A DNA stretch of 64,000 nt, taken from Fonticula alba ATCC 38817 (Eukaryota > Protista > Nucleariida). The first letter of the stretch is position 1, and every line of letters starts with the position of its first letter. The notes beneath the pieces are model-generated. The model saw nothing but the letters and a program-made list of their open reading frames with translations. It ran no database searches and was not told where the DNA came from. Below are positions 3,275 to 49,955 of this stretch, piece by piece. Location of the stretch: assembly GCA_000388065.2 (NCBI GenBank), contig KB932208.1; one strand, written 5' to 3'. The translations under genes and the position numbers were made by a program.

Positions 3275-4760
3275 CTAAGCAGAGAAGGTCTCGCAGTACC
3301 GAGAGGGGGAAAATGGAACGGCCAACCACTCGCAGCAACTTACCGCGGCAACATCTCCCCGTCTTCCGGCAAACGGCCTGGAGTGATGTGAGGGCTTCAC
3401 CGAAAAAAAAAAGGAGCACACACGAAGTCCCGGTGGACCCGGCTGTGTCCACAAATGGGGAGAGGGCAATCTGTTCACCGCCTCCCGGGGTCGGGAAATC
3501 TCCGAAACCACAGATCACCCTCAACCCCACCAGGGGGCCAGGGTGGATGGTCGGCTCCTGACAACAGGCCAAAACACCGAGCGGGAATGCAGCACTCCAA
3601 GATTGGGGGGCAGCCACCAAGCATGAGGGGGGCCCTCACAGGCACGCCCTCGTGCGACAAAGAGGCAAAAACACCCGGCCGGCTGAACGGACGGCCATGC
3701 CGCGAGAGAGGGCACAATGGAGCATGTCAGACACGAGCGGCCGCACCCACACGCACACATCCACATCGAGAGGGAGAGTAAGTGCCAAGCTTTCATCAAG
3801 ATCCGCATGTGTGCATCGACAGGATGCTCTCCCTCCAAACATGGGGTCCCGGCGACGCCGGCGACGCAAACATCGCGTCCGCTCTCGCACCTCGCCTGTG
3901 TCGCCGGCCAACTCCACTCGGCGCGTCTCCCACAGGGAGAGGCAGGCATCCCTCATCGCGCAGATGTGTGTATATATGCGTGTGTGTGTGTGTGTGTGCT
4001 CCCAAGGAGCCAATTATCCCACGAATGGGGGAGAAGAGCCGGAGAAAAATCACACACGCACACGCACAGACAGACAGACTCAACCACGAGACCGAGGAGA
4101 GACAAGGGCCCCCGCACGGTGCAGGCACATGCCGAATCGCTCCCGAGCACGCCGGGAGGAGGGAGAGACCGGACTCCATGGTCGTATGCGCCGGTCGCGA
4201 GCCAGCAGGCAGGCTACCCCGGCCAGGCTCTGGCCAGCCATCCACCCGGAACCGGGGCACGGTCGTTTGGCCCGATGCCGCGACCGGGGCCAGCTCGACC
4301 AGTAGCCGAGGGGTTCGCCATACGCACGCCCGTTCGCGGACAGCCCACAGAGCGGACGCGGGGCAGGAACAAGAGGGCCAATGGAGGAGTGGCGCAGGGC
4401 AGGAGCAACGGGGGAGATAGAAGCTGGATGCCTGCACCGGCCCCCCGCCGAGGGACCCACCACGACGGGACAAAAATCCCCAACGCCGGGAGTAAGACTT
4501 CCCCTCCCCTGGGAGTACGCACATAGGTGGGACGAGGGGAAGGGGAAGACATACATGCAGGCACTCAGGCACCCACCCACACGCACACACGCGCCGTGCG
4601 CTCGCAGAAATGACCAGCCAGTAAACGTGGCAGGTCAATTCACCAGCCCAGGCGTCATGCCCTACGGCACACCTGAAGTGGAATCCCCATGTAAACGATA
4701 GATTAAGTAACACGTGAGATCAATTGCCACACGTGCTACATCTTGGGAATTATAATATCT
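3275..4760 (-). pseudogene. Diverged segmental repeat, copy 1; probable decayed gene for a secreted or membrane protein
   Basis: Collinear anchors with 8550-9800 (CAACCACTCGCA..GGCAACAT.TCCCCGTCTTCCGGCAAA; GTGTCC.CAAATGGG; ACCCGGAACCGG; GGGCCAGCTCGACC; AATTATAAT). The minus strand has a hydrophobic signal-like stretch (LLSPPLLLPCATPPLALLFL). Bases 3275-3308 are identical to 1-34. Confidence 0.5.
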
Positions 4761-6130
4761 CAGAACAGCATCCCTCTGAGAGGAATGCGGGGTAGGACAA
4801 TAGCCAGGCGACTGCCGAGGTCAAGCGACATGGGCGCTCGACCGAGGACGGAGACACGCGAGTGGGCGGGCCCAGTCGCGGGGTTCTCACTTCCAACCCC
4901 TGACCGAATCCAAAGGTCAAAAGGGGGACTCTCTTCGAGAGTCTCCTGAGAGCGAAGGCCATAGCAGCTGGGTGTCGAAGAGTATACGGAAGTATAGCCG
5001 AAGCACCAGAAAGGCCGACGAACACCTGTTCTAAGGTTTCCTCTCGAACCCATTTTAACATTCGAGTTCTTTTCTATTTTGCTTGCCACTAACTCGCCTC
5101 AAGCCGAGTTACTGACTCATCTGTTAACAGACGACCGTGAGCCGTTGGTTGGTATGTCTCGTCCTTCGTGCCAAGAGGTTACTAACCGGATGGCAGATCA
5201 CACCGGTACCCTTGTCAAGCTTCACTCACTTGACTTAGGCTTAACCCGTGTGAACCTTACTACAACACCATATCTAATATGTGATCAAAATCATTATCCA
5301 CATAACCCACAGGGACACTTCCCCCACAATGTGCCTGGGTTGGGCTTTTGGATCCTCCTCGAGGGCCACATCGCCCGCCGGACACAGGCAGGAGAATGGC
5401 CTTCTTTCCTGCGTTTCCCGCCCGGCGAACCAAATTTCCTCCGGCCTCTACTTCGGTAGCCACTTTCTCTTCTACGGACATCGGCTAAGGCCGCCAAGTT
5501 AAGTGCTCTCGAGCGCGATGGTAGCCGCGTGGCCTCCCGGCCGTCCCGTTTTCCCCGGTGCGTGCGCACGCTTCTCGTGTGCGCCGCGGCTGTTCGCCAG
5601 CTAGCTGTTCTTTTGCTTTCAAGCATGTTCGAAAATGGTCTGCTTCCCCTCGACCAAGCGGTGCTCGCGGGGGCTGACCGAGGGTTCAGGGGGTGACCTT
5701 CGACCCTTGTTCGAGGTTATGCGATCCCGGTCATTGCCGGCTATTGGCCACACCCAGCAGGGCCCCCCCCCCCTCTGCACCTCCATCGTAAGGCTGCCTC
5801 TCGGGCGTCTCTCAAAATAGTAACGGTTTCCAAGACCTTCGTCGCGACTCGCCCCTCTGTGTCCCGCCGCCCCCCAGCGCCCCCGAACTCCACTAAACCG
5901 GGCTCCTGGGTGCAGACGATGCCTATTACGCAAGGCTGGGCGGATGCGCTGGTCCGCCAGCACCCGTTACCCCAGTCATGAAGCCGCAAGGCAGTACTTC
6001 TGAAAAAAGAAGAGAGATGAGGTGTCCCTTTGGGTCTGGAGTGGGATAATTCCGAAGCCCACCCCAGCGGTGAAGTTCGGGGAGTCGCCTGAAAAAACTC
6101 ATTTATGGGCTTTTTATAGTCCGCTCCACA
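4680..6130. other. Lower-GC island, possibly a decayed mobile element
   Basis: Visibly lower GC than the flanks. One plus-strand frame (about 4998-5697) is broken by a single stop. The minus strand has a basic gag-like stretch ending in CPCGLCG, but no RT, integrase or recombinase motif was found. Confidence 0.25.
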
Positions 6131-13712: not shown

Positions 13713-13785
13713 TGGAGGCGGAGGGTATCGATCCCCCTGCCTGCCGCATGCTAAGCGGCCGCTCTACCATTTGAGCTACGCCCCC
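13713..13785 (-). tRNA. tRNA-Ala(AGC)
   Basis: Reverse complement GGGGGCGTAGCTCAAATGGTAGAGCGGCCGCTTAGCATGCGGCAGGCAGGGGGATCGATACCCTCCGCCTCCA: 73 nt, full cloverleaf, G3:U70 alanine identity pair, anticodon loop TTAGCAT. Confidence 0.95.
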
Positions 13786-14019
13786 GGTGAGGTGCCTGCC
13801 CAGTGTGGGGCTTTTGTGCTTTGTAACCATAATGTCACCTCCGACGCTGCGTCGGAACTTCGCTCCGCTCACCTCCTCCGCACCTGCCTCACCTCGCCCT
13901 GCTTTGTTTTCCCCTGCTGTCGCCTCCCCGCCAAAATCTGGTCACGCCCTCCACGTGATCAAATGGCCGGAGATCCATTTTTCTTTCCCCCTTTCCCCGT
14001 AGGTGGGTGTTAGCGTCGC

Positions 14020-14360
14020 CCGTCAACGATGCAACCCATTCTCTCTCGTTTTCCCCTTCTTTCCCATGTATTTCCTCTTTTCCGGGCACCCCTATATAAG
14101 GACCCCCTTTTCGCGCCTCCCCTCCAAGGGCTCAGCACCTTGAAGGATAGTCATTCTCTTTGCGGAGGCCGTGACTACCCGTTTCCCTGCCTCTGTACGT
14201 CGCTCCCCTGGAGCGGTGTGACTCAGTCCCTGATGTACTCTCTATAAAGACGCAGATCACCAGCTTTCCTTTCTTTTGTTGTTGTGTCCACGTCCGAGTG
14301 GTGACCCTCTCGGGACGGAACACTCTGGGTGGTTCAGGGAAGACCCTCACCGGTCCCCCA
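14020..14360 (+). repeat. TATA-bearing dispersed repeat, plus copy (inverted partner of 12960-13330)
   Basis: Homology as above; bases 14256-14289 are also identical to 16098-16131. Confidence 0.75.
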
Positions 14361-14568
14361 GAATCACACACCAGAACCAGAGTGTTTCATGCGTGTTTCC
14401 GCGCCCCGGCTGGCCGCCTGGTGCCGCCGACCAGTGGGGAGGATCCTCCTCGATCCGGACGAAGCACCGAGAGCAGACCCTGCCCCGGGAGGGGCCTTTC
14501 CTCGTTCACGCACGCCCGGGCGCGTCCCTCCCCCCTCCGGCAAAAATGGGCGCGGTCCAAAAAGAATG

Positions 14569-14640
14569 CTCCCGATCCGGGAATTGAACCCGGGCCTCCC
14601 GCGTGACAGGCGGGGATTCTCACCACTATACTAATCGGGA
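14569..14640 (-). tRNA. tRNA-Asp(GTC)
   Basis: Reverse complement TCCCGATTAGTATAGTGGTGAGAATCCCCGCCTGTCACGCGGGAGGCCCGGGTTCAATTCCCGGATCGGGAG; anticodon loop CTGTCAC, T-loop GTTCAA. Confidence 0.95.
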
Positions 14641-15719
14641 GTGGAGATGATGNNNNNNNNNNNNNNNNNNNNNNNNNNNNNNNNNNNNNNNNNNNNNNNN
14701 NNNNNNNNNNNNNNNNNNNNNNNNNNNNNNNNNNNNNNNNNNNNNNNNNNNNNNNNNNNNNNNNNNNNNNNNNNNNNNNNNNNNNNNNNNNNNNNNNNNN
14801 NNNNNNNNNNNNNNNNNNNNNNNNNNNNNNNNNNNNNNNNNNNNNNNNNNNNNNNNNNNNNNNNNNNNNNNNNNNNNNNNNNNNNNNNNNNNNNNNNNNN
14901 NNNNNNNNNNNNNNNNNNNNNNNNNNNNNNNNNNNNNNNNNNNNNNNNNNNNNNNNNNNNNNNNNNNNNNNNNNNNNNNNNNNNNNNNNNNNNNNNNNNN
15001 NNNNNNNNNNNNNNNNNNNNNNNNNNNNNNNNNNNNNNNNNNNNNNNNNNNNNNNNNNNNNNNNNNNNNNNNNNNNNNNNNNNNNNNNNNNNNNNNNNNN
15101 NNNNNNNNNNNNNNNNNNNNNNNNNNNNNNNNNNNNNNNNNNNNNNNNNNNNNNNNNNNNNNNNNNNNNNNNNNNNNNNNNNNNNNNNNNNNNNNNNNNN
15201 NNNNNNNNNNNNNNNNNNNNNNNNNNNNNNNNNNNNNNNNNNNNNNNNNNNNNNNNNNNNNNNNNNNNNNNNNNNNNNNNNNNNNNNNNNNNNNNNNNNN
15301 NNNNNNNNNNNNNNNNNNNNNNNNNNNNNNNNNNNNNNNNNNNNNNNNNNNNNNNNNNNNNNNNNNGGCACGACCATATCCCCGGGGACGGCCCGTCCCC
15401 CTGGCCCGATGTCCCCCTTCGGGCCCGGACCACGGGCGCCCATCCATACTGACTTTATGGTGTGTCCGGGTGCCCCGACAGCTTACTGGGACAGCTCACC
15501 CCGCGGACCCCGGAGACACGCCTGCAAGGCACCACGCCCAGACACACCCAGACCGGCAGACCCCGCCTCGCCTCTGCTCCCCGCCCCAGGCAGGAGGCCG
15601 CCCGGGCCTTGTGATGCGGCCCGGGTGCGAAGCCCGCCTTTTTGGCGGCGGGGCGAGATTCCCCGGCGCGGGCCCCCGTTCCGGATAAAAGGCCCGCTGC
15701 TGAGGCAGCCCTCATCGCC

Positions 15720-15792
15720 TCCCATATAGTCTAGGTGGTTAGGATACGTGGCTCTCACCCACGAGACCCGGGTTCGAGTCCCGGTATGGGAA
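15720..15792 (+). tRNA. tRNA-Glu(CTC)
   Basis: TCCCATATAGTCTAGGTGGTTAGGATACGTGGCTCTCACCCACGAGACCCGGGTTCGAGTCCCGGTATGGGAA followed by a T7 Pol III terminator; anticodon CTC. Confidence 0.95.
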
Positions 15793-25173: not shown

Positions 25174-25246
25174 TTCCCATACCGGGACTCGAACCCGGGT
25201 CTCGTGGGTGAGAGCCACGTATCCTAACCACCTAGACTATATGGGA
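25174..25246 (-). tRNA. tRNA-Glu(CTC), second copy
   Basis: Exact reverse complement of the tRNA at 15720-15792; a T-run lies downstream on the minus strand; flanks are unrelated. Confidence 0.95.
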
Positions 25247-25821
25247 GGTCATATCGGATCTCGACCGTAGGCACCTCAAATGCCCACGATGTGGGGCTGC
25301 CGCCGGATCTCGTCCGCCCCTTCGCCCGAACTTCGCGCCGGCCATGCGGCGGTGCGGATTCCTCCCTGCCAAGAACCATGGCCATCCCCAGGTGTCTGCA
25401 CCGACGACGGGGTCCGTGTGCCGTGTGCGCGCCGGCCACAGCGGGGAACGGCCCGCACAGCCGCCGGGCCTCCCCCCGGCATGGAAAAGCCGAGGCGTGT
25501 TTTTGTGCACGGGCCGTCCCCAGGGTGTTTCTTGTCCTGGACGGGGGCCGAGCCGCCTCCCGCCGCAGCGGACGCACCCCTCCCGCCCGACAGTGCGTGC
25601 GCCACACATGGCAGCTGTACACACTGGCCGCGGCCGGGCACACATGGCATTCTGCACGCCAAGCGGGCCCTTTCCCATTGCTGCCTCATCCAAAAGGGCA
25701 GGGCCGCATGCCCCCCCCCCCCCCCCTCCCCACCGCCTTTTCATCCGTCGCACGCATGCACAACCACGGCAGGAGGCTGCCGAGAAAAAGATGCCACGCC
25801 CGGGGCAAAAAGTGAAGGATG

Positions 25822-25903
25822 CATCACCGGCAGGATTTGAACCTACGCGGGCAGAGCCCATCCGATTTCTAATCGGACTCCTTAACCACTCGGACACGGT
25901 GAT
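25822..25903 (-). tRNA. tRNA-Ser(AGA)
   Basis: Reverse complement ATCACCGTGTCCGAGTGGTTAAGGAGTCCGATTAGAAATCGGATGGGCTCTGCCCGCGTAGGTTCAAATCCTGCCGGTGATG: 82 nt, long variable arm, anticodon AGA, discriminator G. Confidence 0.93.
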
Positions 25904-28279
25904 CTACCCGGTGCCTCCGACACTGGACTCTTGTTGCCCTGCAGTGAGTCGGCCTCGGCCGTGCGGGGCCCGGCACGCCTGCTCTTGCCGACCTCCGCGT
26001 TGACCTGCCTCCACGGCCTGCCGCCGCCCGAGCCCCGCGTCATCCGCACCGGCCAGGGCCCTCTGGCCGATGGTCCCCCCCTCGCCAGGCCCGAGATCCT
26101 GCCCGCCCCCCTCCCTGTCGGGCCCCGTCCCGTCGGTTTCACCAGCCAGCGCTGCCCCCCCCCCTCCCCGGGCCCTGGTGGCCCATGCCACCTCGACCGA
26201 TCCCCGGTCCGGCCGTGTGGGAGGTGTCCCGCCGGCATCCTCGAGCCACGCCATCGGCGGGTGCCAGCTGCCGGGTCGAGGCCGAGAACCCTGCGACCAC
26301 GTCGCCCCCCGCCGCCCCGCATGTCCCTCTTCGCCCGGGCCCGGGCACCCCCCTCCACGCCGTGCCTCGCCCCGGGAAACATGTCGCCCAACTCGCGACA
26401 CCCGGTCCCAAAGTGCCCATCCACACCAGGCCCCGTGGGAGTGGCGCGCCACCGCCTGCACGCGGGGCCTCCCACCACTCCAGTGCCACGGCTCGCCCGC
26501 TGCCGCCACCGACCCTGTCACGCCCCACCCCCCGAGCTCCGGCCGCAAACGCAAACACCAAACGCCGAGCCCCCCGCCCCCCAGGTCCGGCCACGCTCCA
26601 GCACCCCGGGCCCCATGACGCCTGCCATGGCCTCGCGCCAGCCGCCTGCTCGGGACTGGCCCGACACGTCGCGCGATGCCTCCCGGTGCAGGGCAGCCGC
26701 GCAAGGACCCGGGCCCCGGTGGCCGCCCATCGCACCCCCTTCCGAGCGAGCCGCGGCCCAGGGCCGAGGGCGGGGCAAGCCATCGGCCCTGACATCCGGG
26801 GCAAGATCCCGGCGTGCGATCCACCGGCCTGGCTCCGCTCTCGCGCCACCGCCCAGACTTCGCCGCATGTGCGATGTCGCTCGCGGACGATGTCCCGTGC
26901 GCCATCCGGCCGCCGGGCCCAGCGCAGCCCGTCGCACAGGGCAAACGCCCACAGCCAGGCACACGCCCGTCGGCCCGATGGCGGTGAATCCGACCCCCCC
27001 CCCCATCGACGGTGATCCCTTGCCCTTACATCCGTCTGCCAGTCGACCAGCCTTCCATGCCATCAGACTGCCCACAGCTTGGCACATGTGGGGGTCGCCG
27101 CTCGGCTCGCGCCTCCCCGGCTCGCGCCTCCCCGGCTCGCCTGCACTGCCCCATGGTCCTCGCCTGCGTGCATGCTCCAGCAGCCAGTGCATCTCCCTTT
27201 CCCACGAGGGTGTCCCGGCAGAGAGCGACAGCCTGCCCGCCAACCACTCCCCGCCCTTCTTCCCCTATCTGGCCCTCGCAGTTCTTACACTCTTGCGGAG
27301 GTCGCCGGTCGAGCGTGGCAATGCGCTTGGCGCCTGGCACCGCCCTCAGCGGCCCCCCCGGCCGCCGCTCATTTCCCGACGTATTCTTTCGTCCCAGGCC
27401 CCTTTCTCCGCCTCGATCACAGGGTGGGCCGTTCTGGGTGGCAAGCTCAGTGCCGCCTCAGGGATCCGGCCGCTGTCAGGACACGGCTAGTTCCGCGAAG
27501 GAAGGCCTTTCATTCTCTCCGGTCAAAAGCACCATTCGCACGGCCGCCGGGCCGGAGTCGGCAGGACGGCGCCCATGAAGCCCAGTCGAGTGCACCCCCC
27601 CCCCGCCCCCCCCCCCGATAGAGCCCCGGGCTTCGGCGACCCAGGGCCGAGCCGACCTCGCCGGGGCGAGACTTGTCCGCTCGGGTCACCCAAGGTAGTC
27701 CCGACCTCGGGGCACATGCCACGGGTCGATCGATGCTCGACCGGGCGCGCTTCGAGCCCCCTCGGGCCAGCCTCCCCCTGCGGCGTGCCATGAGCCCCGG
27801 TGTCCGGGTCCCCGACTCGGGGCGGCCCCTCGGGCCCGGTCGCCAATGCCCACGCTACCCAAAATGAGCCCCTCGGCCGCGAGCCCTTCCCGGCGCCGGG
27901 CGCCTCGGGGGCCTGCCGGCCATGGTCAGAGTGAAGCCGGCAACCGCGCCGCAGGCCAGTCAGCCATCTCCTCATGAAGGCGCATCACCGCCATGCATGC
28001 AAGCGCATCCCTCATGCGGCGCTTCCCGGGTCCCCAACCGCGGGCCCTCCGACCGCGGGGCGGCCGCCCGGATCGAGCATGCCCTGGTGGCCTTGGTCGA
28101 TGGCCAGGTGGCCATTCACGCGCAGAGCCGGCGCGAGGCAGTCAGAGGAGATGGATCACCGCCGGACAGGCTCCATCATCCCCCTTTGTGCCGCCAGGGT
28201 GCGGGTCAGCTGCCTGCAGCCGGGCGTTCAGGCCGTGGCCAACATGCCGGCCGAAGCTGGCAGCCATGGCCGGCCCGCT

Positions 28280-31030
28280 CTACCGGCGCCCTGCACGCAG
28301 CCCGCAAGCCCCCATGGCCAAAGCCCGATTGGTTGCCCTGGCGTCTCCCCCCTCTCCCTCACGCACATGCACACACACACACACACACATGCGCCAGGCA
28401 GACCGGGAAAGCGCGACCATGCATGGGCGCGTGCACAGACACACACGCTCAGGCACTCGTGCACGCAGACACACACGCACAGACACTCGTGTACGCAGAC
28501 ACTCGTGCACAGACACACTCTCACACGCTCTCACACAGACACACTCTCACACAGACACACTCTCACACACTCTCACACTCTCACAACCACTCTCACACTC
28601 ACACAACCACTCTCACACTCACACACAGGCAGGTCTATATCTTCACAAGTACGGCTGACACTGGCGCAGCCGATGCAGCGTGGTATGCGCCAGCTCGCTG
28701 GCCTGTTTCATGCCAATCCCCGGGTTGGCAGCCAGCACACGCGAAACTTCAAACGCATGCGCGCACGGATGGTGCGCATACATCGGCGCCCGGAAGGCAT
28801 CGCCCTGCCGGGCACGCAGCGAATTCACCACCTGCGGCAGGGTGCACCCCAGGTCCGCGGCCACCTGGTGCAGCAGCACCGGCCGGCCGTGCCCGGTCAC
28901 CGCCGCCAGCAGGGCCGGCACCTTGCGCTCCGGCACGAACATGCCCCCCGGCCCGGCCCCGGCCCAGGGGGGCTGCGCCAGGAAAAAGTACTCCGGGCAA
29001 TACCGGTGCAGCATGGAATACACCCGGTCCGGCGGCAGGCCCATCTCCCGGGCCAGCTCCCGGACCGTGTACCGCATGCGCCGGGGCTTGGTCGGGTGGA
29101 CCTCCGCCGCCAGACGCCGCAGCCGTCGGATGCTCGCCGGGGGCAGCTCCAAAAACCGGAACCCATACTGCCACAGCCCCTCCAGGCCGCCCCGGCCCAG
29201 GTGCTGCCGCAGGGTGGTCTCCGACTCGTCCAAGTGGTCCACCAGCTCGGCCAGCAGCAGCGGCGGCCGCAGGGCCAGGGCCAGCAGCTCCTCCGGCAGC
29301 CCCGGCCGGTACACGTCCCCGGGCTCCGGCGGCGGCCCCGGCCGCTGTGGTCGCCGGCCCCCGCGCGTCCGCCGCCGCTTGCCCTCGGCACCCGGGCCCG
29401 CTTCCGGGCCGTGGTCGGGCTGGTCGGCCGCCGGCGCCGACAGGGCCCCCTGCCCCGCCGGGATCGCCTCGCCATGAATCGGCGACCCGGCTGGCAGATA
29501 CCGGCGCGCATACTCGGCCAGGGTCAGCCGCCCGTAATCCGCCGGCCGGGTCAGCTGCCGGATCGGCTGCTCCGCATTGTGCGGGATCACCGCCTCGGGC
29601 AGGAGCCGCGCCAAATGCCGGCGCACCACGCGCGCCGGCACCCGCAGCACCTGCGCCGCCCGGGCCACCGTCAGCCGCCCCGGCTCGGCGGCCAGCAGCT
29701 CCTGCAGCCGGGCCACACCCTCCGAGTCGAGGTCCCTCCCCGACAGGCGGGTCACCTGCTCGGTGTACAGCGCCGGCCCATGCGCGTCGAAGGTGGTCTG
29801 CTCCAGCCGCACCAGGGGGCTCGGCCCGGCCTGCGACACCGACCCCGTCACCAGGACCTCCCGCAGCCCGGGCAGCCGATCCACACGCACGCGCGGCACC
29901 ACCAGATCCACATACTCCGGCAGGTGGGCCGCCAGGGCCTGGGACACCTCGCGACGAGGCGCCGACAGCAGCAACGCCATGTGGTCCAGGGCCAGGGCCG
30001 GGGCCACGGTGCACAGCGCCCGTAGGCGGGCCATGCTCAGCCGGCCCCCGGGCTCCGAGGCCCGGCCCATGGCCTGCGGCAGGTGCAGCTCCAGCAGGGC
30101 CGCCACCTGCCCCCGGTCCAAGCCCACCAGCCGCCCCAGCAGCGGGTTCGGAATGGGCGGATCCCGCTGCGCCAGCGTCGCCAGGTCCTCGAATGCCGGG
30201 TCCCCGGGCCGGACCTCGGGCCGCGCCTGGTCCGACGGCCGCCCCGGCCGGCCGATGGCAAACCTCGGCCCATACCGCGCCAATAGCACGCGCACCGACG
30301 CGCGATCCATGCCCAGCAGTCGGCCCATGGTGGCCACCTCGACCGCCGGCTGTGACAGCCCCGCCAGGCGCAGGAACAGCCGGAAGTCCGCCACGCTGTC
30401 GAACCCCTGCGGCAGGGGCTCCCGGCCCTCGGCGATGGCCCGGCACAGACGCTCCCCGCGCCCGGGGGCCACCGCTCGCGGCGGCTCATCCCGGCTCCCG
30501 GCCCGCCGGGCGGCCCCCCCCATGCCGGGGGAAGGCCCGTCAGGGGTGGACAAAGTGGCCCCGGCATTGGCCACAGCGAGCCCGGCGCGAGGACCGGTCC
30601 GACCATCGGCCGGAGCCTCGCCGGCAGCGATGGGAGCAGCTACCGAGCCGGGATGCGGGCCCGGCCGCCGGTCGGCCGGCAGACCCCCTCCCCGAGTCAC
30701 ACCCGGCAGATGGCCGGCAACATCGTCCAAAGAGCGGGGAGTCGCGCCCGCCGAAGGGGGCTCTCGGTCGGCCGGGGCATCCCCCCGGCCGGCAGTGCTA
30801 CCCGGGCGTTCGGCCGCCCCATCCCCGCCACATCGATCCGCCACGCTCCGACGGCGTCGCTGGTCTTCGCCGTCCCGCCGACCGGCAGCGCCCTGGTCGG
30901 GCTCCGGCCGGCGACGCCCGGCCAGCTGGGACCACCGATCGCCAGATGGCCCGGGCACCCGGCCCGTTGACATGGCACGGCTGCCTACCACCAACATGCG
31001 ACCAAAGGCCACGCGGGTGCATGTCAGCAT
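28280..31030 (-). CDS. Unrecognised protein with ~8 tandem tri-helical HTH-like modules and a mitochondrial-presequence-like N-terminus
   Basis: Long ORF (part of 28643-31606) with repeating motifs such as [62 protein letters not shown]. Likely start [22 protein letters not shown] (ATG at 31030 or 30997). A possible CA-rich intron 28652-28338 joins in frame to a last exon ending at 28280; if unspliced the stop is at 28643. Confidence 0.75.
28360..28630. repeat. Degenerate CA/CT microsatellite inside the predicted intron
   Basis: Runs of CACACA, CACACTCT and CACAGA units. Confidence 0.85.
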
Positions 31031-31743
31031 TGACAGGGATGCGCGTCCAGGACCGAGGGGGGCACGTTCAAAAGGCCGGGGGGACGGGCAGGCAGGGAAA
31101 GGAGAAAGGAGGCAGGCACCGGACAGAGAGAGAGAGAGAGAGAGGGCGCGGAAAGGAAGGGGCAAGCTACATGCCAAGTCCCGAAGGGGCAGCCATGCCG
31201 CGTCCCGCGCGCTGATAAGTCCCCCCTGCCTTCTTTGCCGCCTCCCGGCCCCGGCCAGAGCCCATAACCACGTAAGCGGTCCGAGGGCCCGGCCGCGGCC
31301 CCATGCACCGATCGCCCGATCGCTCGTCCCGCTGTCCCCCCGCCCCCCGATTCGGGGGCGCACACACGTGTACACACACACACGCACACACGCAAGGCGC
31401 CAGTCCCCCAGGCTGGCTGGCAAAGAACCGGGGCCGGTCCGGGCTGTGCGTGGGCACCTCGTCCAATCTGAGCACCAAGGCTTCAGCCGCTGTCCCCCGT
31501 CCCCCCCGCCCCCGGACCTCCTATCCCGTCCAACGCCTCGACACTGACACGACGGCCAAAAAAGGCGGCAGGCGCGGCACATTTGTATTTCTGGCGTCCC
31601 AGCCACGGCGCGGCACCAGCGCTCCCGGCGCCCATGGCCGCTTGGTTGACGCCATCAGGAGACGGCCACCAGGGGGGGGAGGGGGGGCTCGCTCTACGCG
31701 ATGGCACCCGCCCCCCGCCCGCGGCAACATGTGTGGGGGTCCT

Positions 31744-34280
31744 TCAATTTCCGGGCGTCAGGGATTTGAGCCACGCCTTGGCCGCCGCATGGATGTCCTT
31801 GGTGTGTTCCCGGTTTCGGGCGTACACGCGCAGGCGATACTCGATAAAGGGGCCGTCCAGGTCGGGCAGCGGCGTGTCGCGGGGCAGCAGCAGCAGCTCT
31901 TCACCCCGGCAAGAGAGGAGGCAGTCAAGGGGAGGAAAGAAAAGAAAAGAAGGAAGCGGCGAGGCCTCCCCGTGTTAGATGATGCACAGCGGGAGAGGGG
32001 CCCAGCCGAACGCGCGCACATGTGCCCGTTTTTAAGCACGTACTGTCCGGCTTGTCCTTGGAGAAGAAGAGCACCTTGACCATCGGGTCGTTCTCCTTGT
32101 CACCGTGGTGGATGGATGCCAAATCCACATGGAAATCGTCCCTCTTTCATGGCGCACACCGGGAGGGTGAGACGTCTTTCCGGCCGGATGCATGGCGGAG
32201 GGCAGAAAGAAGGGGAAGGACAGCGAAAAAAAAAAAAGACAAAAGAAAACACACGACCGGGGCAAGCAGGTCGCGCGTCAGCCCGCCCCCACCGGCGAAC
32301 ATACCCGGAGCTTCTCGGTGCTGTCCTTCTCAAGGATCTGGTTCTTGAGCCCATCCTCCTTGGCCGCGCGGGTCTGATACAGTTTCCGTGTTGTGAATCC
32401 CATCGGCGCACCGGGAGACCGACCTTCAGGTCAGCAACAGCGCCCGGGCCATGAGGCGGAAGGGGCCCGCTCCGATCCCCCCACACCCCCCCCCCCCCAC
32501 CCCCCCCCCCCTTGCACATGCGGCGTACGCACCAGATCCCGGTACAGGGTCCTGTTGTAGAACACCTTCTCGAAGGCCAACTGATAGAGGTCGCGCTTGC
32601 GGATGCGCTCCACCAGGCCCCGGGCCTGGGCCATGCTCTTGAAGTGCTCGGACTCGCTGTTCTTGTCGCACGGCTCCGGGTCGCCACACATGCACCGCCA
32701 GCCGTGGGCCGCCGACGCGGCAATCTGGTCCAGGATGCCGTCGGTCAAGTGCACATACATGGCCGGGTTGTGGACCATGCTTGAAATGCGCAGGGCCCCG
32801 TCGGCCTTCAGTAGCGCATCCACCACCATCAGGTTGATGGCCTCGGCTGCATGTGCCATCGCGGGGGGACCGAAGTCCAGAGGTACACGGGAGTACACAG
32901 AAGCATGGAGAAGCAGAAAAAAAACCCCAGAAGCACGCAGAGACAGACAAACACACAGATACACACATACATGACGGCGGCAGCGGGTTAGAGATGCAAC
33001 AGCCACACGGCAAAGCAGAAGCCATGGCCCATATGACGCACAGACGCGATGCGTGTACACATGCTTGAACAGGTTGAAGCGCGTCTGGAACATCAGCCGC
33101 AGGTTGGGGAACTCCTTCTCCGGGAAGGCGATCTGCCCCTCGACAATGCGCGCGCTGTTCACCAGGCGCATGGGGTTGTACGCGGTCTGGGCCCCGGCAT
33201 TGTAGGTGTCCCGGCGGAAGTAATCAAACCGGTCCACATCGATGCCGGTGTCGTCATTGGCCACGATCTGGAAGAGGAAGCGCACTTCCGGCGAGGCATA
33301 CCGCTTCAGGCTGGCCGGCACGTCGGCCTGAGCGCGCAGGCCCTTCCCACTGTCGATGACGGCCTTCACCAGGCCCGGGCTGAAGGGGATGTCGCCATTC
33401 TGCTTGGACTTGAGCCACATCAAGCCATCGGCATCCTCCTGAAGACCCAGGTACCGCAGCAGATCGTCGAGCATGTCCACCGACCCTTTCTCATGCGTCC
33501 AGTGGTCGCCCTTCGGCGCGTCGCTGGGTCATCCCATTGTCCCCGGTCATCCCGCGCCCCGCGCGCGCGCGAGCATCCACCGCCCACAGCATGGTGTTAG
33601 TATGCCCCGGCAGAAGGAAGCATCCCCCCCCCCCCCGCCCCCTGGCCCCATGTGGCCGAGTGCAAGCGCCCACACACACACACACACACACACGTACACA
33701 GCCCGGAGCATGAAGTTCCCATCAAACAGGTGGCTAAAGGGCCCGTGCCCCAGATCATGGCACAGCCCGGCGATGATCAGGCTGGTGCGTACTGCCAGGA
33801 AGTCCAGCCCGGCGAAGGCCCCCGGCTGCGTGGCCCACAGCCGATCCACCAGCGTCCGGGTCAGATGGCCCACCCCGAGCGAATGCTCGAAGCGCGTGTG
33901 CGCCGCGCTCGGGAACACGTACGACGTGATGCCCAGCTGCTTCAGGCCCCGCAGCCGCTGGAAGTGCGGCGTGTCCACGATCTGGAAGAAGTACTGCCCC
34001 CGGTCGGTCGGCACGACGGGACCAAAGGCCCAAGCAAGGGCACGAAGGAAATACATGACCACCATCAGCACCGGGCCCAAGAGGAAGGTGGCACATCCGC
34101 CCGCCCGCGTGGAGGCGCAGCAGGGGAGAAGAGGAAAAGGACACATGGGGCGAGCGAGCGAGCGAGAGAGAAAGGCAGTACCTCTTCCAGGGCGTAGTCG
34201 TTGTGGATGCTGTCGTTCAGAGTGCGCAGCTCATGGTTGATGGACACCCCGGGAGGGAGGGGCTCGGACTTGGAGACCAT
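31744..34280 (-). CDS. SAMHD1: SAMHD1-like HD-domain dNTP triphosphohydrolase, paralog A (multi-exon, no SAM domain)
   Basis: Spliced exons give [117 protein letters not shown] and [10 protein letters not shown], matching the ordered motifs of SAMHD1-family enzymes. Confidence 0.92.
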
Positions 34281-49320: not shown

Positions 49321-49391
49321 TGCGTCGACCGGGAATCGAACCCGGGTCTACCGCGTGGCAGGCGGCAATTCTACCACTAAACCATCGACGC
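49321..49391 (-). tRNA. tRNA-Gly(GCC)
   Basis: Reverse complement GCGTCGATGGTTTAGTGGTAGAATTGCCGCCTGCCACGCGGTAGACCCGGGTTCGATTCCCGGTCGACGCA; anticodon GCC. Confidence 0.95.
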
Positions 49392-49882
49392 TTATTCCAC
49401 GGCTGACACGCGCCCGGGGAATATATACCCTCTCCGAGCTGACTTTCCCGTGCGCGGAGCACCCAGTGGCGGTGCCGTGTGATCAGCCCCAGGTCAGCTC
49501 CCGGGAAAGCGCATCACGAGCACGGCCATGTGCTCTTCCAGGCGCACGGGGCGCGAAAGCCCCACAAGCCGGCCATGCCCCCCCCCCCCCAGCCTCGCCG
49601 GGACGGCATGGCTGCCCCGAAGAACAGGAAGTCCCGTCCTGAGGCCGAGAAGTGCGGGCGGCCGTGCGTGCGCCTCCCAAAAGCCGAGGCAAGACCACAG
49701 GGCTCGCAATGACGCCCGATGTTCGGCTCCCCCTCCTCGCCGCCGGCCGGGGCCGACTCCCGGGCCCCTCGCGACTCCGGCCTCATGCCGTCCCGCCCCC
49801 TCCCCCAGGAGAGGGTGAGGGCCAGGAACTGCATGGCCAAGGCGCTGCGCTTTAAATCCCCCAGGGGAGTCCCTTCCCTCAC

Positions 49883-49955
49883 GCCTCGATAGCTCAGTTG
49901 GGAGAGCGTGTGACTGAAGATCACAAGGTCACCAGTTCAATCCTGGTTCGAGGCA
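49883..49955 (+). tRNA. tRNA-Phe(GAA)
   Basis: GCCTCGATAGCTCAGTTGGGAGAGCGTGTGACTGAAGATCACAAGGTCACCAGTTCAATCCTGGTTCGAGGCA; anticodon loop CTGAAGA. Confidence 0.95.

What the first reader, a model, noticed from the sequence alone, without database searches (positions are those of the whole stretch)
28280..31030. Unrecognised protein of eight tandem HTH-like modules with a mitochondrial-style presequence
Seen: eight ~45-60 aa units, each a leading helix, a Pro-containing turn and a helix-turn-helix-like pair: [19 protein letters not shown]; [19 protein letters not shown]; [19 protein letters not shown]; [20 protein letters not shown]; [20 protein letters not shown]; [20 protein letters not shown]; [20 protein letters not shown]; [18 protein letters not shown]. 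This matches the hydrophobic pattern of bacterial-type tri-helical HTH domains (AsnC/ArsR/MarR-like). The N-terminus ([24 protein letters not shown]) is Arg/Ser/Thr-rich with no acidic residues. Inference: a modular organellar DNA/RNA-binding protein (nucleoid organiser or sequence-specific reader), analogous to but distinct from PPR, OPR, HPR and mTERF repeat proteins. It lies directly downstream of the SAMHD1 pair on the same strand.
Basis: partly seen in the sequence, partly recalled or inferred. Interest (0 to 1): 0.75.

Follow-up and report, generated by a model that had tools for sequence, protein, structure and literature searches.

The report
Tandem helix-turn-helix array protein, Fonticula
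This expressed, intron-free gene of the amoeba Fonticula alba encodes a basic protein made of seven to nine DNA-binding helix-turn-helix modules in a row; it belongs to an undescribed family of about 20 genes seen only in this species, and its mitochondrial destination is plausible but unproven.

Summary
The minus-strand gene 28643-31030 (795 aa, Fonticula alba) is present, unspliced, in RNA-derived contigs. It carries a real internal repeat. Seven modules of about 50 aa (M1-M7) are linked by profile-profile tests and align in one register: helix, Pro, helix-turn-helix, then a near-invariant Pro.

The module profile hits only HTH regulators in the PDB. A module model (pLDDT 80) matches HTH, winged-helix and Myb domains.

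An exhaustive profile search finds about 20 relatives, all in F. alba. The only outside similarity is to prokaryotic tandem-HTH arrays, including the C-terminal DNA-reading arrays of TnsD/TniQ proteins of Tn7-like transposons. No mTERF or PPR match was found.

An acid-free, Arg-rich leader recurs in ten of the 13 leaders scored and follows a conserved start codon. In this copy it is weak: it is not amphipathic above shuffles, it is followed by 160 low-complexity residues without codon periodicity, and the protein has an NLS-like [10 protein letters not shown] cluster.

Copies cluster near scaffold ends and evolve fast. The SAMHD1 adjacency is incidental. The scan already reported this family on other DNA of this genome (s1-065573, s1-065450, s1-065408).

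The parts
28643..31030 (-). Whole coding sequence as annotated (795 aa plus stop), single exon
   Evidence: RNA-derived contigs cover 28634-31114 without any joint.
31124..31146 (-). (CT)n / pyrimidine tract about 95 nt upstream of the first ATG; the same arrangement precedes the conserved start codon of the paralogs
30941..31030 (-). Leader: 30 residues, no D/E, 4 Arg. In-frame ATGs at 31030 and 30997; the second aligns with the conserved ATGTTGG start of the paralogs.
   Evidence: The hydrophobic moment is not above shuffles.
30464..30940 (-). Copy-specific low-complexity G/A/P/R/D linker (about 160 aa) with no codon periodicity; transcribed, translation unverified
30404..30463 (-). Conserved N-terminal cap ([15 protein letters not shown]), where family conservation begins
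30248..30403 (-).
30056..30205 (-).
   Evidence: Pfam HTH_24 weak hit.
29903..30040 (-).
29732..29902 (-). Slot M3b: three predicted helices. It is a module by HMM in paralogs but degenerate in this copy.
29582..29731 (-).
   Evidence: M4-M6 E 7e-9. Pfam HTH_20. Model residues 271-336 match winged-helix domains: ScpB Z 7.5, NiaR 7.3, BirA 7.3.
29465..29581 (-). Predicted beta-hairpin wing of M4 plus the conserved block [24 protein letters not shown]
29300..29464 (-). Variable central linker; holds the copy-specific basic cluster [10 protein letters not shown] (NLS-like)
29153..29299 (-).
28973..29143 (-).
   Evidence: AF2 pLDDT 80.2. Fold matches sigma54 RpoN Z 6.1, LexA 5.9, Lrp, Myb.
28934..28972 (-). 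Conserved Gly/Pro loop after M6 ([13 protein letters not shown]); together with PEYFFLA it is a possible wing
   Evidence: the wing assignment is inferred.
28781..28933 (-).
   Evidence: M4-M7 E 2e-3; aligns in register.
28646..28780 (-). It is recognisable as a module only in paralogs H696_05857 and H696_05449.

Best explanation
What it is. The gene is real, expressed and has a single exon. It is the most basal branch of the core clade of a Fonticula alba-restricted family of about 20 genes. Each member encodes a basic (pI 9-10.6), Arg-rich protein. The architecture is a short basic leader, a conserved cap, and nine slots for a module of about 50 aa. The module consists of helix 1, a Pro, a helix-turn-helix, and a trailing Pro-Glu-aromatic segment that in at least some modules starts a beta-hairpin wing.

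Most likely mechanism (inferred, not shown). The array binds a long stretch of double-stranded DNA sequence-specifically. Successive HTH modules would sit in successive major grooves. This is how the tandem HTH domains of the TnsD C-terminal region read about 50 bp of glmS DNA (PMC13251919).

Division of labour (inferred). The least divergent blocks (cap+M1 and M6+M7) would supply a function common to the family. The divergent middle (M2-M5) would set target specificity.

Localisation. The leader, conserved in character across the family, suggests import into mitochondria. I put this at about 45% for the family and about 35% for this copy.
For: - Real gene: GC3 0.9+ over the array. RNA-derived contigs cover 28634-31114 without joints, while the same runs splice the SAMHD1 neighbour at GT..AG sites.
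- Repeat.
- HTH nature: Pfam HTH_23 at 27 bits against a gathering cut-off of 24.6, plus several weaker HTH families at other modules. Paralogs reach 35 bits. The module profile against PDB sequences gives E 4.7e-5 and 8.7e-4, and nearly all of the 41 weak hits are HTH regulators. The M6 model has pLDDT 80, and its top 50 structural matches are almost all HTH, winged-helix or Myb domains, Z 4.8-6.1. M4 plus its wing matches winged helices, Z 6.1-7.5.
- Family.
- Array-level similarity to prokaryotic tandem-HTH arrays: family profile against a TniQ/TnsD-related alignment, 98.1%, E 8e-14, three modules in register. One of those proteins sits in a Tn7-like tnsA/B/C cluster. Control arrays give 96.3% and 91.5%.
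- Published mechanism for TnsD arrays: PMC13251919 and PMC11837452.
- Leader.
Against: - No binding data exist, and no confident model of how the modules pack (whole-core AF2 pLDDT 49). A contiguous DNA-tracking arrangement is therefore assumed.
- The fold matches have middling Z values. The Foldseek E-values are not significant, as expected for 57 residues.
- Similarity to TnsD-type arrays is not specific. Unrelated-looking tandem-HTH arrays score comparably. It shows a shared architecture, not ancestry.
- The TniQ domain is absent.
- Winged helices can bind RNA (SelB is among the matches) or proteins.
- pN/pS is 0.7-1.0 by Nei-Gojobori. That would fit relaxed constraint, although the extreme GC3 bias inflates the ratio.
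- For mitochondria: this copy's leader is not amphipathic above shuffles, acidic residues start at residue 31, and there is an NLS-like cluster.
Confidence: 0.5

Rival explanations
1. Nuclear DNA-binding protein. The same tandem-HTH array acts in the nucleus, for example at chromosome-end regions or as a fast-evolving regulator family. The basic leader is then not an import signal.
For: - A copy-specific [10 protein letters not shown] cluster and Arg-rich linkers.
- The leader of this copy is not amphipathic above shuffles.
- Eight of nine placed copies lie within 75 kb of a scaffold end, and five within 16 kb. This includes copies too divergent to break an assembly.
- The GC-rich genome makes Arg/Ala-rich N-termini common.
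Against: - Ten of the 13 leaders scored, several not alignable to each other, keep 30-94 acid-free residues starting 'ML..R', against a family D+E frequency of 9.5%.
- Four have a high helical moment.
- No telomere repeat was found in the fetched loci. Scaffold ends may be assembly breaks.
Confidence: 0.27
2. Organellar RNA reader. The array is imported into mitochondria and binds specific mitochondrial transcripts, as PPR, OPR or mTERF proteins do, with roughly one paralog per target.
For: - The family size (about 13 full-length members) is close to the number of mitochondrial protein genes in many eukaryotes (my own knowledge, not tested here).
- The leader evidence.
- Winged helices that bind RNA (SelB) are among the fold matches.
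Against: - No match to mTERF, PPR or TPR at E<=10.
- The module is a three-helix HTH with a period of about 50-55 aa, not a helical hairpin.
- All sequence-level relatives are DNA binders.
- Localisation is untested.
Confidence: 0.12
3. Decaying or selfish repeat family. The copies are remnants of a duplicating, recombining element near chromosome ends, under little protein-level constraint and with no cellular function.
For: - pN/pS is 0.84-1.0 between the youngest copies.
- Synonymous divergence is patchy along the gene (pS 0.02-0.18 between close pairs; 0.17-0.48 across M1-M7 between far pairs), which suggests gene conversion.
- There are many partial copies, a tandem fragmented copy beside H696_06061, and a 540-bp dispersed repeat next to some copies.
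Against: - The gene is transcribed.
- Codon periodicity is intact, and the nine-slot architecture is conserved at 33-45% identity across the full-length members.
- The duplicated unit is only the ORF plus about 280 bp, with no TIR, LTR or transposase.
- The NG86 ratio is inflated by GC3 of about 0.93.
Confidence: 0.1

Closest known systems
C-terminal DNA-binding region of TnsD / long TniQ proteins of Tn7-like transposons (tandem HTH domains; AvTnsD HTH3-HTH6, PMC13251919)
   Same: Head-to-tail HTH modules of about 55-60 aa, each followed by a Pro-containing tail (FPxLC..I against PEY/PxLCPEY). Profile-profile 98.1%, E 8e-14, over three consecutive modules in register. In TnsD each HTH contributes base contacts along one long DNA site.
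   Different: No TniQ zinc-finger domain and no tnsABC neighbours. The host is a eukaryote. There are nine slots rather than three to six, an N-terminal leader, and a 20-gene expansion. Similarity of the same order is seen to other tandem-HTH arrays, so specific descent is not shown.
Uncharacterised prokaryotic or metagenomic tandem-HTH arrays (P0023 'transposase-like protein', 8 x 54 aa; P0026, 6 x HTH_11; P0028/P0029 stand-alone arrays)
   Same: Same period and module order (helix 1, Pro, HTH, tail). P0023 aligns to M1-M5 over 303 columns, 96.3%, E 1.6e-9.
   Different: Their function is unknown. They have no leader and are not eukaryotic. Their individual modules match Pfam HTH families strongly, whereas the Fonticula modules are far more diverged.
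Pfam HTH clan: HTH_23 (PF13384), HTH_20, HTH_24/AsnC-type, Sigma70 region 4
   Same: Three-helix HTH with the hydrophobic pattern A..LG.s...V...L. HTH_23 scores above the gathering cut-off. The fold matches agree.
   Different: Those families usually occur as single or paired domains. Here there are seven to nine copies in one chain, with a family-specific Pro-Glu-aromatic tail.
mTERF, PPR and OPR organellar helical-repeat proteins
   Same: Possible analogy only: a nuclear-encoded, expanded family of modular repeat proteins with an N-terminal leader. The LG.s...v..ll...P motif superficially resembles the mTERF motif (my own recollection).
   Different: No sequence or profile match. The period is about 50-55 aa with three helices, and the fold is HTH or winged helix rather than an alpha-solenoid.
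Myb R1R2R3, paired domain and Pipsqueak tandem HTH DNA readers
   Same: Several tri-helical HTH units in tandem on one DNA. Myb repeats are among the fold matches (Z 5.1-5.5).
   Different: No regularly spaced Trp. There are far more units, and there is no sequence match.

Membership tests
HTH superfamily (Pfam clan HTH; HTH_23 PF13384) | Match to a curated HTH model at or above its gathering score | tested here: met
   HTH_23 scores 27.0 bits against a cut-off of 24.6 on M6. Weaker HTH_20, HTH_24 and Sigma70_r4_2 hits fall on M4, M2 and M6. Paralog H696_05449 scores 35.3 bits.
HTH superfamily | Three-helix fold with a helix-turn-helix pair | tested here: met
   M6 model at pLDDT 80.2 has H2-12, H27-34 and H38-48. 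The top 50 VIA matches are almost all HTH, winged-helix or Myb domains, best Z 6.1, rmsd 1.7 over 51 of 57 residues. Z values are middling and Foldseek is not significant.
Winged helix | Beta-hairpin wing after the recognition helix | tested here: inconclusive
   M4 plus the following 15 residues match ScpB, NiaR, BirA, Zalpha and SelB winged helices at Z 6.1-7.5, but this comes from a model with mean pLDDT 49. For the other modules the wing is inferred from the PEYFFLA...MFVPE pattern only.
TniQ / TnsD target selectors | N-terminal TniQ zinc-finger domain (PF06527) | tested here: not met
   No PF06527 hit at E<=10. The cap has no Cys/His cluster.
TniQ / TnsD target selectors | C-terminal tandem HTH array | tested here: met
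   hhalign of family against TniQ-related alignment gives 98.1%, E 8e-14, 133 columns. This is not specific to TniQ arrays.
TniQ / TnsD target selectors | Encoded within a Tn7-like tnsA/B/C element | tested here: not met
   The neighbours are HD-domain (SAMHD1-like) genes and receptor kinases. The bacterial relative P0031 does sit in such a cluster.
mTERF | Match to PF02536, and repeats of about 30 aa forming a solenoid | tested here: not met
   No hit at E<=10. No mTERF chain among the PDB profile hits. The period is about 50-55 aa.
PPR / OPR / TPR-like helical hairpin repeats | Two-helix repeats of 34-38 aa matching the family models | tested here: not met
   No such Pfam family at E<=10. 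The modules have three helices.
Mitochondrial presequence | N-terminal 20-60 residues without acidic residues, rich in Arg and hydroxylated residues | tested here: met
   30 residues, 0 D/E, 4 Arg, 6 Ser/Thr. Nine paralogs keep 33-94 acid-free residues.
Mitochondrial presequence | Amphipathic helix | tested here: inconclusive
   Maximum hydrophobic moment is 0.57-0.63, and 33-42% of shuffles reach it. Four paralogs score 0.76-0.89 (1-5% of shuffles). This is a crude home-made measure.
Mitochondrial presequence | Import into mitochondria and cleavage by the processing peptidase | not testable with these tools
   No TargetP or MitoFates and no experiment were available.
DNA transposase | Catalytic domain and terminal repeats around the duplicated unit | tested here: not met
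   Only HTH hits. Paralog DNA similarity covers the ORF plus about 280 bp upstream and nothing beyond.

The most novel reading that the evidence does not exclude
The family is a new class of nuclear-encoded, mitochondrion-imported, modular DNA readers. Each paralog's variable central HTH modules would spell out a different long site on the mitochondrial genome, or on another genome in the cell. That would make it a eukaryotic counterpart of the TnsD-type array and a DNA-side analogue of PPR proteins, possibly seeded by gene transfer from bacterial prey.
Probability: 0.2. Interest if true: 0.8.

Novelty: new variant of a known kind. Interest (0 to 1): 0.55.

Why it matters
Long tandem arrays of HTH modules that read extended DNA sites have been characterised only in bacterial Tn7-type target selectors. 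Here is a eukaryotic family of about 20 genes with the same architecture. It has conserved end modules, a variable middle and a leader that looks like an import signal. It would be a natural system for asking how HTH arrays encode long-site specificity. If import is confirmed, it would be a previously unknown kind of organellar nucleic-acid-binding repeat protein in a lineage close to the fungi. The family also shows how a species-restricted gene family grows near scaffold ends, with signs of gene conversion and fast protein evolution. For this scan the gain is incremental, because the family was already reported on three other stretches of this genome. New here are the link to TnsD/TniQ-type arrays, the RNA evidence, the corrected start codons, the nine-slot count and the scaffold-end bias.

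Tried and rejected
- ESM Atlas feature search: no usable hit.
- phmmer of the whole array against PDB sequences: nothing at E<=10.
- Self-BLASTP: no off-diagonal hit. The repeat is visible only with profiles.
- Whole-array AF2 with 6 sequences: pLDDT 49, so unusable for module packing.
- Foldseek of the module model: no E<=0.001.
- NCBIfam: no family for the window protein or two paralogs.
- Literature searches on Fonticula plus HTH or mitochondrial genome found nothing on this family.
- Telomere repeat TTAGGG x3: absent from the six loci fetched up to then; no tandem repeat at the L004 scaffold end. 'Subtelomeric' therefore stays unproven.
- RNA runs X5 and X12 (coded 'organism B'): one partly fitting read each, so uninformative.
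- Transposon hypothesis rejected: no catalytic domain and no terminal repeats.
- Functional link to SAMHD1 rejected: not conserved at the paralog loci, and the RNA contigs show no coverage between the genes.
- An upstream start that would remove the leader was rejected. RNA depth is zero at 31152-31545, and the paralogs place the start at the aligned ATG.
- Specific descent from TniQ arrays was considered and not adopted, because control arrays score similarly.
Full report
**What is there**

The finding is the minus-strand ORF 28643..31606. The protein's own database cluster is P0001, and its only word-search relatives are Fonticula alba proteins. The gene lies about 42-45 kb from one end of the 1.86-Mb scaffold KB932208.1. 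It sits directly downstream of two HD-domain (SAMHD1-like) genes on the same strand.

Base composition by codon position shows a very strong coding signature (GC3 0.9-0.96, GC2 about 0.5) from about 30530 down to the stop. There is none between 31030 and 30530. The 1097-aa ORF on the opposite strand is Pro/Ala/Gly-rich. I read it as the usual antisense artefact of a GC3-rich gene.

**Expression and gene structure**

Two small 2012 runs (X1, X2) are RNA-derived. Their contigs skip four introns of the SAMHD1 neighbour, with CT..AC ends on the plus strand, which is GT..AG on the gene's strand. The same runs cover 28634-31114 without any joint. Depth is zero in 28000-28590 and 31152-31545.

So the gene is transcribed and unspliced, and the contigs do not join it to SAMHD1. 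The transcript includes both in-frame ATGs (31030 and 30997) and the low-complexity stretch behind them. Contigs cannot give ends, strand or level. Runs X5 and X12 held essentially nothing.

**The repeat is real**

Self-BLASTP sees nothing, but profiles do. I cut the six-sequence paralog alignment into modules and compared them with hhalign:

| Module pair | Result |
|---|---|
| M4-M6 | 95.8%, E 7e-9, 49 columns in register |
| M1-M2 | E 3e-5 |
| M2-M3 | E 1e-4 |
| M1-M5 | E 2e-4 |
| M4-M5 | E 2.5e-4 |
| M3-M5 | E 5e-4 |
| M4-M7 | E 2e-3 (marginal) |

Eighty-six module sequences (seven slots across the paralogs) align with MAFFT in one register. The consensus is h..L..L....P.......A..LG.........L....P, and the last Pro is nearly invariant.

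I scored an HMM of these modules on the segments that were not used to build it. The slot between M3 and M4 (M3b) is a module in divergent paralogs (15.5, 13.6 and 8.2 bits; at most 1 of 1180 shuffled decoys reach these). M8 is a module in two paralogs (8.1 and 5.9 bits). This copy's M3b and M8 score like decoys.

The family therefore has nine slots. This copy has seven recognisable modules and two degenerate three-helix slots.

**The modules are HTH**

- Pfam gives HTH_23 at 27 bits (cut-off 24.6) on M6. Weaker HTH_20, HTH_24, Sigma70_r4_2 and others fall on M4, M2 and M6. No mTERF, PPR or TPR appears at E<=10.
- The module profile against PDB sequences gives 9sgv_A at E 4.7e-5 and a phage gp37 (4j2n) at 8.7e-4. 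Below them, nearly all weaker hits are HTH regulators such as IclR, AraC, DeoR, ArsR, AsnC, XRE, CRP and the IS21 transposase.
- AF2 of M6 with the 86-row module alignment gives pLDDT 80.2, with helix 1, a short bridge, then helix-turn-helix.
- Foldseek E-values are not significant for so short a model. The exhaustive VIA search returns almost only HTH, winged-helix and Myb domains: sigma54 RpoN Z 6.1 with rmsd 1.7 over 51 residues, LexA 5.9, DosR, Lrp/AsnC, Zalpha and c-Myb.
- In the low-confidence whole-array model (pLDDT 49), the one region that finds matches is M4 plus the following hairpin. It matches winged helices: ScpB Z 7.5, NiaR 7.3, BirA 7.3, SelB 7.1.

The Z values are middling, but sequence and fold evidence agree. 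How the modules pack against each other is not known.

**Family**

- The word search found five F. alba paralogs at 39-43% identity.
- The exhaustive HMMER profile search of 1.84 billion representatives found 22 proteins at E<=0.001. Four of them (P0022, P0023, P0025, P0026) come from unnamed metagenome or sequencing-run contigs, and the other 18, window gene included, are F. alba proteins.
- About 13 members are near full length. Several are fragments, and three are distant (H696_02523, _03118, _00212).
- In a maximum-likelihood tree the window copy is the basal branch of the core clade. A young cluster (H696_06163, 05419, 06348, 05959) sits at the tip.
- DNA similarity among paralogs covers the ORF plus about 280 bp upstream and stops there. 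There are no terminal repeats and no transposase.
- Of nine copies I could place, eight lie within 75 kb of a scaffold end and five within 16 kb. These include the window copy and H696_04187, which are too divergent to have broken the assembly. My rough Fisher combination of the positional fractions gives p of order 1e-3 to 1e-4.
- No TTAGGG repeat was found in the loci fetched by then, so 'subtelomeric' is a hypothesis.
- Nei-Gojobori pN/pS is 0.7-1.0 overall.
- pS itself is patchy along the gene. It is low in the cap and in M6-M7 and high in M4-M5. That suggests gene conversion. The extreme GC3 bias inflates these ratios, so I read them as fast evolution, not as proof of neutrality.

**The leader**

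Aligning the upstream DNA shows that the paralogs share a start codon, ATGTTGGCTTCAAGG, a short way after a (CT)n tract. It is in frame with their annotated, shorter starts. The window's second ATG (30997) aligns with it, and the window has the same (CT)n tract at 31124-31146.

From that start the paralogs read MLASRA.VRALRAWGSPA.... They remain free of Asp/Glu for 33-94 residues. More divergent members with unalignable N-termini (H696_06061, 05305, 05961, 05857, 05858, 02523) do the same for 37-63 residues, against a family D+E frequency of 9.5%. This conservation of character without conservation of sequence is what presequences show (established knowledge). It is the best argument for mitochondrial import.

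For this copy the case is weaker:
- Only 30 acid-free residues.
- No helical moment above shuffles.
- A copy-specific stretch of about 160 G/A/P/R/D residues follows, without codon periodicity.
- A copy-specific [10 protein letters not shown] cluster sits in the central linker.

I could not run a targeting predictor.

**Closest things known**

The weak non-Fonticula hits of the profile search are themselves tandem-HTH arrays.
- One of them, P0022, aligns to M3-M3b-M4 over 123 columns (92.9%, E 3.7e-7).
- Its word-search relatives include proteins with an N-terminal TniQ domain.
- One of these, P0031, lies in a bacterial contig next to TnsA-like/rve, Mu-transposase-C, TniB and a second TniQ gene. 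That is a Tn7-like element.
- Profile against profile, the Fonticula family matches this group at 98.1%, E 8e-14, with three consecutive modules in register. The match includes the tail FPeLC..I against HGP.LCPEY.

A 2026 preprint reports that the TnsD C-terminal region consists of tandem HTH domains, each making base contacts along about 50 bp of glmS (PMC13251919). Another paper shows that a terminal HTH of about 60 aa is essential for tRNA-site targeting (PMC11837452).

As a control I compared the family with two other arrays. P0023 (8 x 54 aa) gives 96.3%, E 1.6e-9 over 303 columns. P0026 (6 x HTH_11) gives 91.5%. So the similarity is to a class of tandem-HTH arrays, not specifically to TniQ proteins. 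The Fonticula proteins also lack the TniQ domain. I therefore use TnsD as the mechanistic model and do not claim membership or descent.

**Verdict**

The reading 'modular nucleic-acid-binding array, distinct from PPR and mTERF' is supported. 'Organellar' is plausible for the family and doubtful for this copy. The SAMHD1 adjacency is incidental.

The most likely mechanism is sequence-specific reading of a long double-stranded DNA site by successive HTH modules. This is inferred from fold, architecture and the TnsD precedent, and none of it has been shown. The family is undescribed in the literature I could search. It was already reported by this scan on three other stretches of the same genome.

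Noticed in passing
window 4723-5264; L001 7275-7819, 7825-8452, 8946-9485; L007 2120-2724: A dispersed repeat of about 540 bp (70-90% identity) lies 0.3-2.7 kb upstream of two family paralogs, in direct and inverted copies. It occurs once in this window, 24 kb from the gene. Its nature is unknown.
   Followed up: partly
L001 9806, L004 9818, L002 (conserved ATG upstream of 10001): The public gene models of H696_06163, H696_05419 and H696_06112 appear to start too far downstream. A conserved in-frame ATG adds 61-65 acid-free residues in H696_06163 and H696_05419 (MLVSRTAVRALRAW...), and the homologous upstream ATG of H696_06112 reads MFASRAAGRAPRLW....
   Followed up: partly
Scaffolds KB932206, 208, 210, 211, 214, 216, 218, 222: Family copies lie near scaffold ends, often two per scaffold, and beside furin-like/GF_recep_IV receptor-kinase genes. 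This may reflect expansion regions near chromosome ends, or assembly breaks at repeats.
   Followed up: partly
window 28973-29143 and 30404-30463 compared with 29153-29731: Synonymous divergence between paralogs varies two- to six-fold along the gene. It is low in the cap and in M6-M7, which suggests patchy gene conversion.
   Followed up: partly
window 31899-32043, 32144-32304, 32374-32532, 32847-33041: RNA-derived contigs confirm four GT..AG introns (minus strand) in the downstream SAMHD1-like gene. Its contig depth is about 40-fold that of the HTH-array gene.
   Followed up: no
window 13713-15792, 25174-25903, 49321-49955: Seven tRNA genes in three small groups: Ala, Asp and Glu; Glu and Ser; Gly and Phe. 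The Glu/Ser pair lies 2.7 kb downstream of the gene.
   Followed up: no
window 28430-28626: A degenerate CA/CT-rich microsatellite array sits immediately after the stop codon. Reads appear cut there, so the transcript's 3' end is not defined.
   Followed up: no
L009 2109-5561: Three short called genes (223, 252 and 369 aa) lie directly upstream of H696_06061. The middle one (H696_06059) is a fragment of a family member, so this looks like a broken tandem copy.
   Followed up: no
L012 2099-14014: A bacterial metagenomic contig carries a Tn7-like element with two TniQ genes. One of them (P0031) has a C-terminal tandem-HTH array. An rve gene and an IstB_IS21 gene sit side by side inside the element, which looks like an IS21 insertion.
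   Followed up: no
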